64,000 bases of DNA. Origin: Oculina patagonica. Lineage: Eukaryota. Within the stretch, counting starts at the first letter, position 1. The number at the start of each line of letters is the position of its first letter. The stretch spans positions 10,230,001 through 10,294,000 of the forward strand of contig NC_135759.1 of NCBI RefSeq assembly GCF_052425735.1, given 5' to 3'. The position numbers and the translations under genes are program-made. Under the pieces are notes generated by a model. The model was not told the DNA's origin. It did not search any database and worked only from the letters and a program-made list of their open reading frames with translations. Shown here piece by piece: positions 1 through 9,067 of this stretch.

Positions 1-266
1 TTCATTTTCCATGGATTTTGTCCCCATTTTTTTAATCAATTACTCATAAATAACCTCACTATCTCTCGAACTCGGTTGCCTCGAGCTCCCATTATGTTCA
101 ACAGTTGGCAATTTCCCTAATCTGATTTTTTTCCAAATTTAGCCCCCGGTAACTCAAACTGTGATAGTTAACCGAACCCGTACTAGAGACTACGCAAACT
201 TCCCACGAATATATTTAGAACATTTTAATAACATGGTTTTTATGGGTTTTTTATTCTTTATTGCAG

Positions 267-286
267 CTGCTGGGAAAGATCTAAAG
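267..286 (+). CDS. 20-nt micro-exon of the transcobalamin-beta/DUF4430-like gene (x-A-G-K-D-L-K)
   Basis: Strong acceptor ttttttattctttattgcag| at 266 and donor aag|gtaaat at 287. Phase 1 in and phase 0 out, so it joins in frame to the exon at 6056. Confidence 0.7.
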
Positions 287-487
287 GTAAATAGTCTAGG
301 CCACGAACTATTTAATCACATTTGGGATCTACACATTGTAAACTTCCGGACCCTCCCTTTTTCAGAAGAATCTTACCTTAGAGCGAGAAAATATTAAACA
401 GCCTGTAGCGCAATACCATACAATTCATTCAGTCTATTTTGGAAAATTTGCAAATTTGAAAATGCCAGTAGATTGATTAGTTACTTA

Positions 488-658
488 CAGCAAGGCGCCC
501 AAAAGAGTGACCACTTGTAATTTATTCACATTCTTTCGTGCTGATTTAATCCAATCAAAAGCCGTGGATAGCTCTTGCAGTTGACTTCTGATTGGATTAA
601 ATCTGCACGAAAGAATGTGAATAATTTAAAAGTGGTCACTTTTTTGGGCGCCTTGCTG
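488..658. mobile_element. Palindromic MITE with TA target duplication (Tc1/mariner-type signature)
   Basis: cagcaaggcgcccaaaa...ttttgggcgccttgctg, self-complementary over most of its length; TA at 486-487 and 659-660. Confidence 0.85.
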
Positions 659-1407
659 TAAGAGCAATTCTTTCATTTAGTCAAGCAAAATGGGAAAAGA
701 AAATTTTTGACCCCACTCAAACTTTGCATGCAGTTAGATATTCAGGGGGGTGTACAAAAATAGCCTTCTTTAAGGTTGTAAACCTTTTTGTTGTCATGGC
801 AACAGCCACTGTTTGTTGGAGACTCCAAATCTGATTTTTTGCTTAGAAAATGCTACGAAATGTGCAAAATTTGAAGTGTTGATCCTAAAGCCCATTAAAA
901 CACTAGTGCTCAAGACTTGTAAGAAATAAAGAACCATCATTCTAGTTAACATTGATGTATAGGACGTTTAATTAAATTAAATTTTTAGCGACTTAATAGT
1001 CAATCAAGTAGGTACGTTTTCGGCCATTTGAGTTGATTGGTAAAACTTGCTAGACGTTTCCTTCAATTTTTCCAAAAGTACACCAGTCCCAGACCAGAGA
1101 CTAGACAGGCAGTTTACATGGATGTCATAGTTTTTAAAACTGTAAAGATCTCTGCGGGGCGGATTATCTTATTCAAAAGAAAAGTTAGTGAAAGAGCCGC
1201 ACAAAAATGGGTATTTGTGTATTTCGGCGATACCAACAGTCTGTCTATTCGCCAACAAAGTTTCTTTCAACACTAAATACGCTATCAGACCAAAAGAATA
1301 ATATATCTGTTGTGACACTGCTTGATCAAAAAGAGTCGTATTTGGCCTCTTTTTTTAAGCAATATTATCAAAGTAAGCTTACCTCGAACACCTTTTCTAG
1401 TGCGCCA

Positions 1408-1450
1408 CTTGTTGTTGTTGTTGTTGTTGTTGTTGTTATTGTTGTTGTTA
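1408..1450. repeat. (GTT)n microsatellite in the left arm of the palindrome
   Basis: About 13 GTT units with one interruption; the mirror site in the right arm (~5003-5017) has only about 4 AAC units. Confidence 0.9.
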
Positions 1451-4407
1451 TGATGGAGAAGGTTCATTCCTCGAGCATTTATATTCATCACAAATTCAGG
1501 TGCCAGTAGCTTTGCTGAACTGGCTGTCTCTACACCATCACTGATTGTAAACCAGCTAATTTCAGTATATTCACACAAACCAGACAAACGATAGCAGGCT
1601 CAGCAACTTCTCTAAGATACACTCGAGTCAGCGAGCCACGATAAGCAACCGTCCGGTTTCCGCCATAATTTTCGCTGTTTTTTCCGATAAGTTGACATCA
1701 CTCGCTCTCGAAGAAGGCAAATGCTCTTAAACCACTGGTTCACCGAAGAATCGCCAATACTTAAGGTGTTATACCCATCAATTACTCCGAATATGAAGTC
1801 AGATTGTCAGATGGTGAGAGATCGTGAGATCGTACAGAGTATTATTGGTCAGCGGTTTTGACTGAAAATGATAACTATATTATAATTTCCAAAACAATGT
1901 GTCCTATGGCTTTCTCCTGTACAAAGGTTTTCAATGACCGTACTGGATCCTTTTCATGCCTTCTTCAGAGTACTTATATTTTAAGGAAGTTTGGAAATTA
2001 ACAATTTCACACCTTGCACGAGAAATAATGTGTTTTATATCTCAGTAGAACCATTCTTGTGTTAAACCCTTTTGGCCAGAAAGGGAGGGGACATATAGCG
2101 GTGAACTACTGATTCTTTTACTTTCTCAGAAATTTATCTTTGGAAAAAAAAAAACCGTTTTGTACATGACTTGAAGTTTTCGTGGTAACTATATTTTGAT
2201 TGACATTGTTGGCCAAATTTTCTTTTTCGCTTTCCAAGATCACTTTGACATTTATTTAATAATGGATTTTGATGAGCTTTCGGGAATTCAAATCTTCTGA
2301 CCAAAGCCGACTTGAAGAATTTTGACGCAAATGTGACCGTCTTGTCAGGCCACTGTTAAATACGAACCGCTTAAAATCAAGCATTTTTGTAAACACTGTC
2401 AAGTTTCATTACCATAGTGTTCTTACATTTTGATATAACAAATGCAAACACTTTATACTTTCCATGGTGAGGTAAGCAGATAAGTCAAGAGCAATTTTGG
2501 CTTGCATTACAGTCTTCAAGTGGGAGCTTTGCAGTTGCAGCTGTTAACCTGAGAGAAATGACACATTTTGCATAAGGCTCATTTCGTCTTCCTTCACTTC
2601 TGCGACTTCACATTCCGACTCTGAAAGCTGATTTCGTTTTGCCGCAAAGCGAGAAAAGTAAGATGTAATAATTTGCTGAGGGGTTAAGAATTCCTCCAAA
2701 GAAAACAGCCTCTGATTGTTTGTATCTCTAACTTTTCTCATTTCTTTTGCTATACGGCTACTTTCTTTCCTGAATTCTCCCCTTGTAAAAACTTGCCTTC
2801 AAGAAAAATTTTCTACTTTTCGCTAAATCTGACTGGCTTTGATTTAAGAAGCATTGTGGGCTAGAAAAGAGAAATTTGAGTTTACTTCGCATTTTTTTTT
2901 CAATGTTTATCATGACTACAAACCAGAATACGTCTTTGTCCGATTATGTTGTTTTTTGACGGCTTTTATTTCGATTTTATTGGCGGTTGTTGTCCGGAGT
3001 ATTTCTTCATCATTCGCCGAGTCAGTTTAAACACGTTTTGTTTTAATTTTTGCGCCAGAAAACTACATTGCTTTCTAGATAGTAAAGTTTTAATGAAAAT
3101 GTTGGACATTCTTTGCTTTTTAGAGAAATCTCAACTATCGCTCATCTGAATTCAAAGCTGTGAAATGAAATGGTTCCAATTCTGGCGTCTCGCAAAAGTA
3201 GCGATAGCGGGGCCGTACGCTTTTCTAGTGGGGCCGTACGGCTTTTTCCGGCCCTGCTAGAGGGAGGCGTACGGCCCTCATACGGGACTTTTTTTCATAT
3301 GGTTTTCCAAGGAAATTGCGCGCGAGTCCGTACGGGTCATATGATAATTTGGCTTTCTGCTAAACGCTGCGCGTACCTCAACTTTGCCCTGTCTTGCAGG
3401 GTAACTTTTTCCAATGCCATTACATGAGCCCCATATTCACAGTGTTTCTCCATGGCAGAGTAACGCACAAACCACTTTCTGTACCCTTCTTCAGGGCAGA
3501 AGAATTAAAATCTTCTGAGTAAAAACCTCAGCCGGGCGAAAAGCAGACAACTTTTCTTGAAGGCAAGTTTTTACAAGGGGAGAATTCCGGAAAGAAAGTA
3601 TCTGGAGAAGCCGTAGCAAAAGACTTCTTAACCCCTCAGCAAATTATTACATCTTACATTTCTCGCTTTGCGGCAAAACGAAATCAGCTTTCAGAGTCGG
3701 AATGTGAAGTCGCAGAAGTTGAGCGTGCCTTACAAGACGCTAGACAAGAAATCATTACTTCTCTAGAGAAAGCTTGTCATCATGCATCCCGTTGTTCAGA
3801 GAGACCTGCGATTATGCGAGATGTCAGACGATCAATTGTCTTCGCTATACGCTTAGCAACGCTGAAAGCGATCTGAAAGGAGTTTGACTTGAAAGCTTCA
3901 GGAAGACGAAATGAGCCTTATGCAAAATGTGTCATTTCTCTCAGGTTAACAGCTGCAACTGCAAAGCTTCTGCCTACCTCACCATGGAAAGTATAAAGTG
4001 TTTGCATTTGTTATATCAAAATGTAAGAACACTATGGTAATAAACTTGACAGTGTTTACAAAAATGCTTGATTTTAAGCGGTTCGTATTTAACAGTGGCC
4101 TGACAAGACGGTCACATTAGCGTCAAAATTCTTCAAGTCGGCTTTGGTCAGAAGATTTGAATTCCCGAAAGCTCATCAAAATCCATGAATAAATAAATGT
4201 CAAAGTGATCTTGGAAAGCGAAAAAGAAAATTTGGCCAACAATGTCAATCAAAATATAGTTACCACGAAAACTTCAAGTCATGTACAAAACCGTTTTTTT
4301 TCCAAAGATAAATTTCTGAGAAAGTAAAAGAATCAGTTGTTCACCGCTATATGTCCCCTCCCTTTCTGGCCAAGAGGGTTTTTAAATCCTTTTGGTTTAA
4401 AAAGAGA

Positions 4408-4462
4408 AGAATGGTTCTACAAGAATGGTTCTACAAGAATGGTTCTACAAGAATGGTTCTAC
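4408..4462. repeat. 14-bp tandem repeat (aagaatggttctac) x ~4
   Basis: Seen directly; a single copy at the mirror position ~2045-2058. Confidence 0.9.
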
Positions 4463-6055
4463 TGAGATATAAAACACATTATTTCTCTTGCAAGGTGTGA
4501 AATTGTTAATTTCCAAACTTCCTTAAAATATAAGTACTCTGAAGAAGGCATAGAATTAAACATTTTCAATGAAAAGGATCTAGAACGGTCATTGTAAACC
4601 TTTGTACAGGAGAAAGCCATAGGACACATTGTTTTGGAAATTATAATATAGTTATCATTTTCAGTCAAAACCGCTGACCAATAATACTCTGTACGATCTC
4701 GCGATCTCTCACCATCTGACAATCTGACTTTCATATTCGGAGAAATTGATTGGTATAACACCTTAAGTATTGGCGATTCTTTCGGTGAACCAGTGGTTTA
4801 TAGCGGAAACCGGACGGTTGCTAATCGTGGCTCGCTGTAAGTTATCTTAGAGACGTTGCTGAGCCTGCTATCGTTTGTGTGAATATACTGAAATTAGCTG
4901 GTTTACAATCAGTGATGGTGTAGAGATAGCCAGTTCAGCAAAGCTACTGGCACCTGAATTTGTGATGAATATAAATGCTCGAGGAATGAACCTTTTCCAT
5001 CATAACAACAACAACAAGTGGCGCACTAGAAAAGGTGTTCGAGGTAAGCTTACTTTGATAATATTGCTTAAAAAAAGAGGCCAAATACGACTCTTTTTGA
5101 TCAAGCAGTGTCACAACAGATATTATTCTTTTGGTCTGATAGCGTTTTTAGTGTTGAAAGAAACTTTGTTGGCGAATAGACAGACTGTTACACAAATACC
5201 CATTTTTGAGGCTCGTTCGCTAACCGTTCTTGTGAATAAATTAATTCCCCCCGCAGAGATCGTTACAGTTTTAAAAACTAAGACATTCATGTAAACTGCC
5301 TGTCTATTCTCTTGTCTGGGACTTGTGTACTTTTGGAAACATTGGAGGAAACGTCTAGCAAGTTTTACCAATCAACTCAAATGGCCGAAAACGTACCTAC
5401 TTAATTGACTATTAAGTCGCTAAAAATTTAATTTAATTAAACGTCCTATACATCAATGTTAACTAGAATGATGGTTCTTTATTTCTTACAAGTCTTGAGC
5501 ACTAGTGTTTTAATGGGCTTTAGGATCAACACTTCAAATTTTGCACATTTCGTAGCATTTTCTAAGCAAAAAATCAGATTTGGAGTCTCCAACAAACAGT
5601 GGCTGTTGCCATGACAACAAAAATGTTGCAACCTTAAAGAAAGCCATTTTTGTACATCCCCCCTGAATATCTAACTGCATGCAAAGTTTGAGTGGGGGTC
5701 AAAAATTTAAATTTCCCACTATGCTTGACTCAATTAAAGAATTGCTCTTAAAAAGGATATGAATGTGGTTTTTGCTACATCAGAACAAAAAAATCTCATG
5801 CCTATATTGAGAATGAGTTTGATGAGTTTGTTCCTTCCTAGACTAGTTTTGTTTTTATTTTTTTGCGGGGGGGGGGGGAGGGGTGGGGGAAGCGGGCTTT
5901 TTAAGTCTATTTGCACTAAGACTTAAACGCATTCTCGAGCAACGATTTTTCGGACAATCAAAGCTGTACTTGGGTGTTGATGTCCGCATTTTTAATCTCT
6001 GGAAGTAAAGTCGATATAAATAACCTTTATGATGTCCTTTGCTGTCGTTCTTTAG

Positions 6056-6394
6056 ATCCGCGTCTGTGTTGAGCTTGTGTTCAATGCAACAAAGTACACC
6101 AGCGGCCGGAGTCCTCCTTTGCCTGCATGTGTCAAGGTACGCAATGGTACTAATGCACACGACATCTTGAAAATGGCCGCCACACAAGACTCCTGCTTCA
6201 ACTTCACCGCAGTCATGACGATGTGGGGACACAGCGTGTATTCCATTTGCGGGCTTGATCGAAGACCTGCTGACAAGGTCTACTGGATGATTTACATCGA
6301 CGGCAAATCGGCGCGCACTGGAATTGATTATCTGAGGCCTGGTGACGGATCCACTTTGGTGTTTGTCTACAAGCAGCTGTTTTGGCGAAAATGA
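6056..6394 (+). CDS. Terminal exon of a small protein with a transcobalamin/intrinsic-factor C-terminal beta domain (DUF4430-like), putative cobalamin binder
   Basis: Acceptor gctgtcgttctttag|ATC. Translation IRVCVELVFNA...WGHSVYSICGL...YWMIYIDGKSARTGIDYLRPGDGSTLVFVY...* matches the G-x-V-x-SI-x-G...YW...G...GI...P-x-DG...F-x-Y pattern of this domain. AATAAA at 6650-6655. Confidence 0.8.
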   Translation: MRVCVELVFNATKYTSGRSPPLPACVKVRNGTNAHDILKMAATQDSCFNFTAVMTMWGHSVYSICGLDRRPADKVYWMIYIDGKSARTGIDYLRPGDGSTLVFVYKQLFWRK

Positions 6395-7051
6395 AAGCTG
6401 CATTTAGTAGCTTCAGTTTTTTGATGGTTTTCATCAAAACTGTTCGGTTGCTTGAAAGCGACAGGAAGCACAGGACAAAAATAGAAAGAAATGTTTTGTC
6501 CATGTTATAGCGTTTTCGTCTTTTTTATAACCGAGATATTGTGAAAATAGTTTTGTAAAAACTACACAATGTAGAATGCTGCCGCCATATTGTGAATATT
6601 AGTGTCCTTCTTTGGGTCGCTAATTTGGTGGCCATAATATTGGACAGGAAATAAAGTAGATACTACTATCGATAGAATTCGGTTTCACTTCGTAGCCTAA
6701 AGCTAAATAGTACCCCTGTCACATTCCTACAGTAAAAAGTCCATCTTTTTTATGTTACCCTAGGCTGCGTGCAACCGTTTCATATTTCCTCACGCAGGCA
6801 AGGAACGTCTTCGAAATTAAACGAAACGGCGTCGCTAATCGTGTTCCAGCATCTCCTGAATGTGCATTTGATTTACCGAGGCAGTCTTAAGCAAACACTC
6901 AGAGCGCGCGCATGTATCCCCAATGTTTTCAAGTTTTGTCACACGGGAAGCATTGCTTCCAGCGTCAATTTTTGTTTCCAAGAAGCAAAATTGGCTTCTG
7001 CTACACATGGAAACATGGTAAATCGAGGAAACATTTATAGAACCCCGTTTT

Positions 7052-7457
7052 GGGGGCACTGTCACACGGATTTTAATGCTTTTTGGTAAAAAATACTAAA
7101 ATTGGCAAATAGGTCTTCTCGTACATGAAAGGCACCTAGTACATCAAGATGAAAATATACAATAAATTGTTGTTGAAGGAAGAAGGGAGCCATTTTTATT
7201 TTATGTGTTTTTCCAGTCCACAAGGACAAAACTTGAAAAAATCAGCCTGATATTTTCAAGTTGAGATCTAAAGTTTCTGATGGCAACACAATAACATTGT
7301 TTGTCAGTTCAGTACACTTGTATGGTAATTTTTAACACTTGTATGGTAATTTTTAACACTTGTATGGTAATTTTTAACAAAATTGGACCACTATTTGTAG
7401 TTTCCATATGTCTTTATGCTCTTGAGGTTTTGAAGTGAAACTGGTGACAGTGTCCCT
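7052..7457. mobile_element. TTAA-type (Kolobok-like) MITE, left end damaged, with an internal 21-bp x3 tandem repeat (7314-7376)
   Basis: TIR ggggcactgtcac / gtgacagtgtccct followed by TTAA (7458-7461). Confidence 0.65.
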
Positions 7458-7697
7458 TTAAACATAACATTTTTATTGTCAAGCAGCTATTTCTTCCAAA
7501 CTCCGTCGTTTACAATTATTTTTGCCATAATACATTGTTAAATTGGATAATCTGCGGCTTAGATCGTCGTTGCAGCTTGTTGACTAGGCCAGCTTCTTGT
7601 AGACAATGCAGTTGCTGAAATTATAAGGAATATTATTCCACTTGTCATTGATAGGAAAATTGGATACGTTATCAGCGATCTTCCTCCACTTGGCTTA

Positions 7698-7848
7698 TTG
7701 CTGGCTTGCAACTGACGTCACGGCGGCCATGTTGGGGGATAGGAACAAAGCGTTTCCCTCCACTGGGAAATGTTCATGCAAATGTTGCGAAAATTTATTT
7801 TATTGTTTTGACCCCCAACATGGCCGCTTTGTGGTTGCAAGCCAGCAA
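7698..7848. mobile_element. Short palindromic MITE with TA TSD, inserted in the lectin exon
   Basis: ttgctggcttgcaac...ggcggccatgttgg / ccaacatggccgc...gttgcaagccagcaa; TA at 7696-7697 and 7849-7850. Confidence 0.85.
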
Positions 7849-7895
7849 TAGGCGGCATTGTCATTCGGTTCACCAGGACCCCAATACGTATAGAC

Positions 7896-8210
7896 AGCAG
7901 GAGGGATTGCGGGGGGCCCGGAAGAGCGGAGGGAAAAAAATGGCGCGGAAGATAAACTGTGACTGAGCGAAAAAGAGATTCAAAAAAGTGGTGGGGGGCA
8001 AGAGAGGCGGGAGGAAAAGGAAAAAGTGGAAGGAGCCCACACGAGGATAAACAAAGGAGGAGAGGACGGACAGGGACGAGCAGACCAGCGGAGAGGGAGG
8101 AGCGAAGAAGGCAAAGGAGGGGAAGGGAAGAGAGCGAGGACGAGGGGCAGAGGGGGGGGGGGAGAAGACACGGAGGCACGAGAGCGCCGACGGCGCAAAG
8201 CCCTCCTGCT
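7896..8210. mobile_element. Purine-rich MITE with 9-bp TSD (Mutator-like signature), inserted in the lectin exon
   Basis: TIR agcaggagggattgcg / cgcaaagccctcctgct; perfect TSD cgtatagac at 7887-7895 and 8211-8219. Confidence 0.85.
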
Positions 8211-8644
8211 CGTATAGACTGGAACCGAGTTATCACACCAGAACCAGTCCGCTGCGCTTGAATCCCAGGTCATGAAGCTTGCTGTCTCACGAGACTCAGG
8301 ACAAACTCGTTTTCTTCAAAAAAGAAAATTAAAAACCCAATTGAGATCGACAAGTTTTGCCGAACCATCGAAGTATGAAATTGTATGCCAATAGTTTGAC
8401 GACGCCGCAGGAAACAAATGAATCGCGGTTGAACTTTTAGGTTAATGCTCACAGATTTGAGCAACTATCCAAATCGGAATAAAAGTTAGTTTTTTCATTG
8501 ACTTTCAATTTACCATTTTTCTGTTTATTTAATCTGTTTAACAGTGCTTCGTGGCTACGGAAACTTTATCGTGAAATCATAACAACTTAGCTCACGGGTA
8601 GCAGCATTGCTCACACTAAGTGTACTGAATTCTTGTGTTATTTT

Positions 8645-8815
8645 ATAGAACAAATAGATTCCATTTTGCCGTGGATCTGTTCAGTTATAGATCACAGAAG
8701 ACGTCAAAATGTGGTATGAACATCAGTGACTCACTAGCCTAGCGGTTCGTGGGCCACTTTTCTGTTCATACCACATTTTGACGTCATCTGTGATCATCTG
8801 TGATCTATGAAACAG
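8645..8815. mobile_element. Palindromic MITE-like repeat
   Basis: Inverted arms atagatcacagaagacgtcaaaatgtggtatgaac / gttcataccacattttgacgtcatctgtgatc. Confidence 0.7.
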
Positions 8816-9067
8816 AAGACAACAAACTTTCGAAGAACTCACGATAAGATGAATTTGAAAATCTGCTTGTCAATAAAATTGGAGGCAAGAAATTTGTTCA
8901 ATTAATTTTACAATTTTCCTAGTAGTGCTTTATTCTAACCAGTTAATGTTTAATTGTATGCATATATCTTTGGAGGAAAGTTCTTCTGAACAATTACATA
9001 AGTAAGCGGCCGATATTTTCTTATTTCCTAAATTGTCAAGTCCACGTTTGGGTTGTGCGAAACTCCT

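What the first reader, a model, noticed from the sequence alone, without database searches (positions are those of the whole stretch)
662..5747. 5-kb intronic palindrome made of two transposase 3' ends joined head to head
Seen: ~2.1-kb inverted arms, each containing the transposase C-terminus pointing outward, so the element has two right ends and no left end. It is nonetheless bounded by a TTAA duplication, which suggests it moved as a unit. It fills ~88% of the 287-6055 intron. Inference: the pre-mRNA would fold into a ~2-kb dsRNA hairpin, a potential source of endo-siRNA and ADAR editing, and would bring the splice sites close together.
Basis: partly seen in the sequence, partly recalled or inferred. 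Interest (0 to 1): 0.7.

Follow-up and report, generated by a model that had tools for sequence, protein, structure and literature searches.

The report
Fold-back remnant of a coral transposon
A dead, palindromic leftover of a cut-and-paste transposon sits in an intron of a coral vitamin-B12-carrier-like gene; the structure is real, but it is a known kind of transposon debris, and its proposed double-stranded-RNA effects could not be tested.

Summary
Window 662-5747 is a 5,086-bp element with inverted arms at 662-2823 and 3536-5747. They are 97.1% identical over 1,939 aligned bases and differ by 25 indels. Each arm carries the broken last ~170 codons of a transposase, pointing outward.

A 10-kb relative on contig C5 shows the origin. 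Both arms copy the end next to the transposase gene's 3' end, and they meet at one junction unique in the genome (about 3536, 2-nt microhomology).

The TTAA duplication is real. The left copy reads GTAA only because a 171-bp MITE later inserted into it. A paralogue and a related coral read straight across the empty site.

The family is not piggyBac. Its enzyme has a compact integrase-like DDD core with no Pfam match. Targets are 4 bp (TTAA in 7 of 11 elements) and normal terminal repeats are 0.56-1.24 kb. Motifs resemble published Sola2 transposases, by eye only.

The likely origin is template switching during gap repair, as proposed for the mosquito MITE Goblin. "Moved as a unit" is unproven. 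This is a new member of a known kind, of modest interest.

The parts
267..286 (+). 20-nt micro-exon of the host transcobalamin-like gene (reads AGKDLK after completing a split codon)
   Evidence: It keeps the frame between the upstream exon (L027 9766-9949) and the last exon. The exon and both splice sites are conserved in two tandem paralogues.
287..6055 (+). Host intron (5,769 nt) holding the MITE and the palindrome; about 0.5 kb without them
   Evidence: GT at 287 and AG at 6054-6055. Homologous introns are about 0.4-0.75 kb in paralogues and about 0.57 kb in a related coral contig.
486..660 (.). 171-bp MITE (body 488-658) with its TA duplication, inserted into the left TTAA of the palindrome
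   Evidence: 78-nt inverted arms. At least 903 candidate loci, with full-length copies at 95% identity. Removing it restores ...ACT-TTAA-GAGC.
662..5747 (.). The palindromic non-autonomous element, termini 5'-GAGCAATTC...GAATTGCTC-3'
   Evidence: The whole stretch is absent from the paralogue and from related-coral sites.
662..2823 (.). Left arm. Homology to the C5 copy continues to 2845 (C5a 2012-4335).
2480..2845 (-). Left-arm remnant of the last transposase exon (residues about 154-322, with a 177-nt deletion and several stops)
   Evidence: tblastn and translation.
2863..3350 (.). Nested copy of an abundant dispersed repeat, truncated on one side relative to other copies; present only in the longer (left) arm
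   Evidence: 176 candidate loci, with the scored ones at 85-93% identity. Other copies extend further upstream.
3346..3498 (-). Spacer: further piece of the same exon (residues 78-128), present once
   Evidence: tblastn. BLAST places window 3345-3537 on C5a 4410-4598.
3535..3537 (.). Head-to-head junction. C5a plus-strand position about 4598 is joined to minus-strand position about 4313, with 2-nt GC microhomology and no filler.
   Evidence: Sequence comparison. No other locus in the genome spans it.
3536..5747 (.). Right arm (inverted copy of the same end)
   Evidence: At sites where the two ends of the C5 copy differ, both window arms carry the same state.
3538..3978 (+). Right-arm remnant of the last transposase exon (one in-frame stop, 51-nt in-frame deletion)
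   Evidence: tblastn and translation.
5748..5751 (.). Right TTAA target-site duplication. The left copy is T485 + TA + A661, split by the MITE.
   Evidence: Relatives have a single TTAT at the site.
6056..6394 (+). Last exon of the host gene (DUF4430, transcobalamin-like C-terminal domain)
   Evidence: Pfam PF14478, E = 1.7e-6. Coral homologues align from the first residue.

Best explanation
Window 662-5747 is a non-autonomous fold-back (extended terminal repeat) derivative of a long-TIR DNA transposon that prefers TTAA targets. The family's transposase is a compact integrase-like DDD enzyme, most like the Sola2 group.

Formation (inferred). Its parent resembled the 10-kb copy at C5:24354411-24364405. 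During repair of a double-strand break, most likely gap repair after excision, a growing strand switched template through the long, near-identical terminal repeats. It then copied the gene-3' end a second time in inverted orientation. The two nascent ends were joined at a 2-nt microhomology. This removed the 5' three quarters of the transposase gene and left 2.2-kb arms around a 285-nt spacer.

Later history (shown). The element lies at a TTAA in a roughly 0.5-kb intron of a transcobalamin-like gene. Afterwards it accumulated about 3% arm divergence, 25 indels, a nested repeat and a MITE in its target duplication.

Consequences (inferred). It encodes nothing. If the host gene is transcribed, the intron is predicted to fold into a long imperfect hairpin that is removed with the intron. 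Any siRNA or ADAR consequence is untested.
For: Structure:
- Inverted arms.
- Collinearity of both arms and the spacer with one end of the C5 copy.
- A unique junction with GC microhomology.
- Both arms share the same state at sites that tell the C5 copy's two ends apart, and both are left-type beyond 570 nt.

Insertion:
- TSD restored after removing the MITE.
- Contiguous empty site in paralogue 1 and in a related coral contig.

Family:
- At least 40 scored ends in the genome.
- TIRs of 560 bp in the C5 copy and 1.23-1.24 kb at 94-97% in five other elements.
- 4-bp TSDs in 11 elements: TTAA x7, TTAC, TTAG, GTAA, TAAA.

Enzyme:
- The C5 gene is collinear with intact 1,049- and 1,058-aa relatives.
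- At least 135 loci in the genome.
- AlphaFold model with pLDDT 80, with retroviral integrase cores as the best fold matches.
- D68 and D151 are invariant and D192 nearly invariant.
- Motifs match Sola2_PPa-1 by eye.

Mechanism precedent:
- Goblin, derived from Ozma, is explained by a template switch between TIRs during SDSA followed by microhomology joining (PMC3814204).

RNA hairpin:
- MFE -3769.5 kcal/mol, 1,883 arm-to-arm pairs, longest helix 220 bp.
Against: - The formation mechanism is inferred from a single junction. Two nucleotides of microhomology is weak, and the true parent is about 6% diverged from the C5 copy, so the breakpoints are approximate.
- Mismatches between the arms are unevenly spread (18 in 1062-1262 and 11 in 662-862, against 1-6 per 200 nt elsewhere). 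A single duplication followed by uniform decay does not predict this.
- The Sola2 assignment rests on motif comparison by eye, not on a scored alignment.
- There is no RNA or long-read evidence of any kind.
Confidence: 0.8

Rival explanations
1. Mu killer-like silencer. The palindrome is transcribed inside the host pre-mRNA. Its hairpin is diced into small RNAs that silence the remaining autonomous copy on C5. It would then be a functional (or at least effective) trans-silencing locus rather than inert debris.
For: - It is an inverted duplication of part of an autonomous element, including about 0.5 kb of transposase coding sequence plus 1.8 kb of 3' flank and TIR, like Muk (PMC1563492).
- It lies in the sense-transcribed intron of an apparently intact gene.
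- Long perfect helices are predicted.
- Only one full-length copy of this subfamily remains.
Against: - No expression or small-RNA data could be obtained.
- The arms are about 6% diverged from the C5 copy.
- Introns are short-lived in the nucleus.
- A single remaining old copy (its own TIRs are 95% identical) is equally expected from ordinary decay.
Confidence: 0.1
2. Two independent insertions of the same family in opposite orientation (one into or beside the other), followed by deletion of the inner parts.
For: The family is moderately abundant, and nested insertions are common in this region.
Against: - There is only one pair of TTAA duplications, at the outer ends.
- There is no element terminus or TTAA at the junction.
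- The two arms are each other's closest relatives (97%, against about 94% to the C5 copy) and share states at diagnostic sites.
Confidence: 0.05
3. Fold-back assembly artefact (chimeric long read).
For: Palindromes with a short unique centre are a known artefact form. No reads could be laid.
Against: - 57 substitutions and 25 indels between the arms.
- A nested repeat in one arm only.
- A MITE in the TSD.
- Precise TSD and empty site.
Confidence: 0.02
4. Ordinary family member: the family's normal terminal repeats already include the coding tail.
For: Family TIRs are unusually long, 0.56-1.24 kb.
Against: - In the C5 copy the TIR ends 560 nt in, and the stop codon lies 1,814 nt from the end.
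- No other genomic locus has the inner arm sequence at both ends.
- In a distant relative with TIRs of at least 731 bp, the ORF ends 1.27 kb inside the repeat.
Confidence: 0.03

Closest known systems
Goblin MITE derived from the Tc1/mariner element Ozma in Aedes aegypti (PMC3814204)
   Same: The sequence on both sides of one internal junction derives from the same subterminal region of the parent, with unequal lengths and in inverted orientation. The junction shows microhomology. The published explanation is a template switch between the terminal repeats during gap repair, followed by end joining.
   Different: Goblin is miniature and multi-copy. The coral element has 2.2-kb arms that reach into the transposase exon, occurs once, and belongs to a different superfamily whose repeats are already long.
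Mu killer (Muk) of maize, an inverted duplication of a partial MuDR (Slotkin et al. 2005, as described in PMC1563492)
   Same: It is a natural rearranged copy of an autonomous transposon, with parts that include transposase coding sequence joined as an inverted repeat able to give a long hairpin RNA.
   Different: Muk covers the 5' end of mudrA and is shown to make dsRNA and small RNAs and to silence MuDR. Here the 3' end is duplicated and no RNA evidence exists.
Galileo / Foldback-like elements with extended terminal repeats (P superfamily, Drosophila; PMC3573991)
   Same: TIR length is highly variable (18-1,250 bp), with non-autonomous copies made almost only of TIRs and copies with 'extended' TIRs that recruited inner sequence.
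   Different: The superfamily and TSD differ. The arms here (2.2 kb) exceed the lengths reported there and include a coding remnant.
Sola2 transposons (Bao et al. 2009; DFa/PPa elements in PMC3627910)
   Same: 4-bp AT-rich target duplications and a large (about 900-1,050 aa) transposase. By eye, the same motif order is seen: N-terminal TQILS...F..AN.H..G.G, then D-F-(A/K), D-N-A, and GK(G/S)xCD. Sola TIRs are reported up to 1,124 bp (PMC10741241).
   Different: The published amoebozoan Sola2 TSDs are AWWT-type, and their TIRs are 12-22 bp. Here the target is TTAA-preferring and TIRs are 0.56-1.24 kb. No scored alignment was possible.
piggyBac and Kolobok (the TTAA-specific superfamilies; PMC9587614, PMC13565253)
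   Same: Preferred TTAA target. The termini GA...TC fit Kolobok's RR...YY rule.
   Different: 4 of 11 TSDs are not TTAA. There is no piggyBac Pfam domain and no C/DxxH signature. The catalytic core is compact, with about 41 residues between the second and third acidic residues.

Membership tests
Fold-back / extended-TIR non-autonomous derivative of a cut-and-paste transposon | Both arms derive from the same end of an autonomous relative and make up most of the element | tested here: met
   Arms plus spacer are collinear with C5a 2012-4598. The arms share states at diagnostic sites. Arms make up about 85% of the element.
Fold-back / extended-TIR non-autonomous derivative of a cut-and-paste transposon | Family termini and a target-site duplication retained; no intact coding capacity | tested here: met
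   GAGC...GCTC termini and TTAA TSD. Coding remnants carry stops and deletions. No match to exons A or B.
Sola2 group of the Sola superfamily | 4-bp target-site duplication | tested here: met
   11 elements have perfect 4-bp duplications.
Sola2 group of the Sola superfamily | DDD catalytic triad on an RNase H-like fold | tested here: met
   Model pLDDT 80, with integrase cores as best matches. D68 lies on strand 1, D151 after strand 4 and D192 at the start of a helix; they are invariant or nearly so in 22 sequences. Catalysis itself was not assayed.
Sola2 group of the Sola superfamily | Significant sequence similarity to reference Sola2 transposases | tested here: inconclusive
   Only motif agreement by eye with Sola2_PPa-1 and Sola2_DFa-2 printed in a supplement. 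Those sequences have no reference usable in the tools, so no scored alignment was run. Pfam has no model.
piggyBac | piggyBac transposase domain (Pfam DDE_Tnp_1_7), strict TTAA target, CCC...GGG termini | tested here: not met
   No Pfam hit on the exons or on the 1,049- and 1,058-aa relatives. 4 of 11 TSDs are not TTAA, and the termini are GAGC...GCTC. The CCC...GGG rule is from my own knowledge.
Kolobok | [quoted passage not shown] | tested here: not met
   The termini GA...TC fit. The TSD is not strictly TTAA. Between D151 and D192 the alignment shows GCYH and DFSDP but no C/DxxH.
GingerRoot / Ginger (integrase-related DNA transposons) | 6-bp TSD (GingerRoot) or TG...CA termini with Gypsy-integrase motifs (Ginger) | tested here: not met
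   TSD is 4 bp, termini are GAGC, and there is no rve hit in Pfam.
Mu killer-like hairpin silencer | Inverted duplication of part of an autonomous element, including transposase coding sequence | tested here: met
Mu killer-like hairpin silencer | Transcribed hairpin, derived small RNAs, and silencing of the autonomous element | not testable with these tools
Only a thermodynamic prediction is available.

The most novel reading that the evidence does not exclude
The palindrome is a coral counterpart of maize Mu killer. Transcription of the host gene would turn the intron into a roughly 2-kb hairpin covering the transposase 3' coding region, its 3' flank and the terminal repeats. Small RNAs made from it would then keep the last full-length copy of this Sola2-like subfamily (C5:24354411-24364405) silent. 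That would be a naturally arisen trans-silencing locus in a cnidarian.
Probability: 0.1. Interest if true: 0.7.

Novelty: new member of a known kind. Interest (0 to 1): 0.3.

Why it matters
The locus is a clean, datable example of how long terminal repeats grow and how fold-back non-autonomous elements are born. The parent-like copy, the junction, the target duplication and an empty site are all available in one genome.

It also documents a large, Pfam-less DDD transposase family in a coral. That family has at least 135 loci, many with intact ~1,000-aa reading frames, prefers TTAA targets, and has terminal repeats up to 1.24 kb.

If the intron hairpin were shown to yield small RNAs or heavy A-to-I editing, the locus would be a natural test case for transposon-derived dsRNA in cnidarians. 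As it stands, that is only a prediction.

Tried and rejected
- Independent assembly: the look-up of encoding contigs with a 139-aa ORF of the right arm found nothing.
- Classification by databases: Pfam gave no family for the catalytic exon, 22 homologues or two full-length relatives. A profile search against PDB sequences found nothing. The protein atlas gave only unnamed eukaryotic clusters and a weak DUF7869 hint. The word search returned 1,292 unnamed hits.
- Literature: Bao et al. 2009 is not held. The Sola2 alignment supplement was unreadable machine text.
- Step left out: a scored alignment to the Sola2 sequences printed was not run, because they have no reference.
- Families rejected: piggyBac, Kolobok and GingerRoot/Ginger (see the membership tests).
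- Structures rejected: an assembly artefact, two nested insertions, and normal TIRs that include the coding tail.
- Host gene: it was examined exon by exon only.
- Earlier notes of the scan contained nothing on this family.
Full report

Yes. The repeat finder reports 20 collinear inverted blocks, 20-506 nt long and 84-100% complementary, pairing 659-2823 with 3536-5750. BLAST confirms them.

A global alignment of 662-2823 with the reverse complement of 3536-5747 gives these figures:
- 1,939 aligned positions.
- 57 mismatches, or 97.06% identity.
- 25 indels. The largest are 177 nt extra on the right (3720-3899), 62, 51, 44 and 27 nt extra on the left, and a 14-nt unit repeated four times at 4407-4462.

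This is far beyond chance. It is also too imperfect for a fold-back read artefact.

**2. What the arms are.**

The left arm finds at least 40 scored places in the window's own genome. The closest is C5:24354411-24364405, a 9,995-bp element with these features:
- 560-bp terminal inverted repeats (TIRs), 95% identical.
- A perfect TTAC duplication.
- Minus-strand open frames of 341, 290 and 322 aa.
- These frames, plus a small exon, are collinear with residues about 100-1,047 of intact single-ORF relatives of 1,049 and 1,058 aa elsewhere in the genome.

The window's left arm is collinear with the first 2.3 kb of that element, the end beyond the transposase stop codon. The spacer at 3345-3537 continues the same strand to element position about 2,590. 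The right arm is the same 2.3 kb inverted.

tblastn puts residues 154-322 of the last exon on the minus strand of the left arm. It puts residues 78-128 on the minus strand of the spacer and residues 162-312 on the plus strand of the right arm.

Both remnants are dead.

At positions where the two ends of the C5 copy differ, the window arms almost always share one state. Beyond 570 nt both are of the gene-3' type (56 of 64 sites). The arms are closer to each other (97%) than to the C5 copy (about 94%).

**3. The centre and the junction.**

The "unique" centre is mostly a nested copy (about 2863-3350) of a dispersed repeat with 176 candidate loci. It is truncated relative to other copies.

The real head-to-head junction is at about 3536. 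There the plus strand of the parent (position about 4598 in my C5a numbering, which is loci L013+L019 joined) meets its minus strand (about 4313). The overlap is 2 nt (GC), with no filler. No other locus in the assembly spans this junction. Before the nested insertion the element had 2.3-kb arms and a 285-nt spacer.

**4. Insertion site.**

Eleven family members show perfect 4-bp duplications next to 5'-GAGC termini: TTAA seven times, and TTAC, TTAG, GTAA and TAAA once each.

In the window the right flank is TTAA (5748-5751). The left flank reads GTAA. A 171-bp MITE (488-658) with a TA duplication lies inside it. That MITE belongs to a family with at least 903 candidate loci at about 95% identity. 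Removing it restores ...GTTACT-TTAA-GAGC.

I rebuilt the empty site from window 260-485, the TTAA and 5752-6075. It aligns continuously with tandem paralogue 1 and with a related coral contig (L038). Both read ...ATTACTTAT(G)AAAG(G/T)ATA... across the point of insertion. Their introns are about 0.4-0.75 kb.

So the roughly 5.26 kb at 486-5751 (MITE, palindrome and one copy of each duplicated target) is an insertion into a once short intron.

**5. Host gene.**

- An upstream exon matches Cobalamin_bind (PF01122; L027 8080-8742).
- A second exon lies at L027 9766-9949.
- A 20-nt micro-exon (267-286) restores the frame. It is conserved with both splice sites in two paralogues.
- The last exon (6056-6394) carries DUF4430. 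Coral homologues align from exactly its first residue.

The intron 287-6055 is therefore well supported by sequence but not by RNA. The element fills 88% of it.

**6. Which transposon family?**

It is not piggyBac. There is no Pfam domain on any exon, on 22 homologues or on the full-length relatives.

An AlphaFold model of the 290-aa catalytic exon has pLDDT 80.3 and pTM 0.76. Its best structural matches are retroviral integrase catalytic cores. D68 and D151 are invariant and D192 nearly invariant. They sit on strand 1, after strand 4 and at the start of a helix. This is a compact D-83-D-41-D core without an insertion domain.

Comparison with the candidate families:
- **Kolobok** requires a strict TTAA target and a C/DxxH signature (PMC9587614). 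Neither is met, although the termini GA...TC fit.
- **GingerRoot** has 6-bp duplications.
- **Sola** elements have 4-bp duplications, DDD enzymes and TIRs of 11-1,124 bp (PMC10741241). Sola2 has AT-rich 4-bp targets (PMC3627910).

The printed Sola2_PPa-1 and Sola2_DFa-2 proteins show, by eye, the same motifs in the same order:
- TQILS...F..AN.H..G.G in the N-terminal part.
- CDFKEN against QDFAMKF.
- CDNARHF against QDNAGCYH.
- HGKSECD against SGKGSCD.

I therefore call the family Sola2-like. No scored alignment was possible, because those sequences have no reference in the tools, and that step was left out.

**7. Long repeats are normal here.**

Five elements of a sister subfamily (4.1-12.4 kb, about 80% identical to the C5 copy) have 1.23-1.24-kb TIRs at 94-97% identity. 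Their two arms both carry sequence that in the C5 copy is found only at the gene-3' end (positions about 585-1,247). So elements with two ends of that type have transposed repeatedly. None of the five encodes the transposase, and one holds a nested non-LTR retrotransposon.

A distant relative with an intact 1,058-aa frame has TIRs of at least 731 bp at 99%. The window element is the extreme of a family tendency. A quarter to a half of each arm is ordinary TIR.

**8. How it most likely arose (inferred).**

The anatomy is one end copied twice with unequal lengths, inverted, and joined at a short microhomology. This is what Yang et al. described for the mosquito MITE Goblin. They explained it by a switch of the nascent strand from one TIR to the other during synthesis-dependent gap repair, followed by end joining (PMC3814204).

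Long TIRs make such a switch easy. Extended-TIR copies are also described for Galileo (PMC3573991).

Whether this happened before the element reached this intron or in place afterwards cannot be told. The duplication and empty site are expected either way, and the junction is single-copy. The uneven spread of arm mismatches is unexplained.

**9. RNA consequences (predicted only).**

Folding the 5,769-nt intron gives -3769.5 kcal/mol. It has 1,883 arm-to-arm pairs, 19 helices of 30 bp or more (1,441 bp in total) and a longest helix of 220 bp.

The hairpin base (661/5748) would leave about 680 nt between the splice sites. The adjacent MITE would also fold.

The closest functional precedent is maize Mu killer, an inverted partial MuDR whose hairpin transcript silences MuDR (PMC1563492).

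**10. Verdict.**

- The structural interpretation is supported, with corrections on the junction, the nested repeat, the MITE in the TSD, the family assignment and the long normal TIRs.
- "Moved as a unit" and the dsRNA effects remain open.
- This is a new member of a known kind.

The organism is a stony coral according to another agent's unchecked note. Cnidarian names among the hits are consistent with that.

Noticed in passing
window 486-660: A 171-bp TA-flanked MITE with 78-nt inverted arms belongs to a very abundant, young family: at least 903 candidate loci, with full-length copies about 95% identical.
   Followed up: partly
window 2863-3350: Copy of a dispersed repeat of roughly 0.5 kb or more (176 candidate loci at 85-93% identity). 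It contains several GGCCGTACG-like motifs. Other copies share further sequence upstream, so this one is truncated. Its class was not determined.
   Followed up: partly
window 267-286 and L027 8080-9949: The host transcobalamin-like gene uses a 20-nt micro-exon in the linker between its Cobalamin_bind and DUF4430 parts. The micro-exon and its splice sites are conserved in two paralogues.
   Followed up: partly
G000:C2:10214034-10236400 and C3:21185956-21188607: Three transcobalamin-like genes lie in a cluster on C2. Two are on the opposite strand, and their last exons are 94-96% identical to the window gene. A fourth, more distant copy lies on C3.
   Followed up: no
L035 (G000:C11:21399000-21408000) 1105-9001: A distant relative of the same transposase family has an uninterrupted 1,058-aa frame and terminal repeats of at least 731 bp at 99% identity. 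It looks like a recently active element. The repeat runs to the end of the fetched stretch, so its full length is unknown.
   Followed up: partly
L015 (G000:C6:5788200-5797500) 4463-7135: An 890-aa endonuclease and reverse-transcriptase frame (non-LTR retrotransposon) is nested inside a 7.2-kb non-autonomous member of the 1.24-kb-TIR subfamily. The same structure occurs on contig C1078, probably a haplotig.
   Followed up: no
window 1411-1450 vs 5005-5016; window 4407-4462: Tandem repeats have changed length between the arms. A GTT microsatellite is 27 nt longer in the left arm. A 14-nt unit is present four times in the right arm and once in the left.
   Followed up: no
window 7297-7379: A 21-nt unit is repeated about four times downstream of the host gene.
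   Followed up: no
G000 genome-wide: The Pfam-less DDD transposase has at least 135 scored loci (355 candidates), many with open frames of 650-1,130 aa. It is a large, apparently live and so far unnamed family in this coral. A member with short (30-nt) TIRs next to TTAA also exists (L036).
   Followed up: partly
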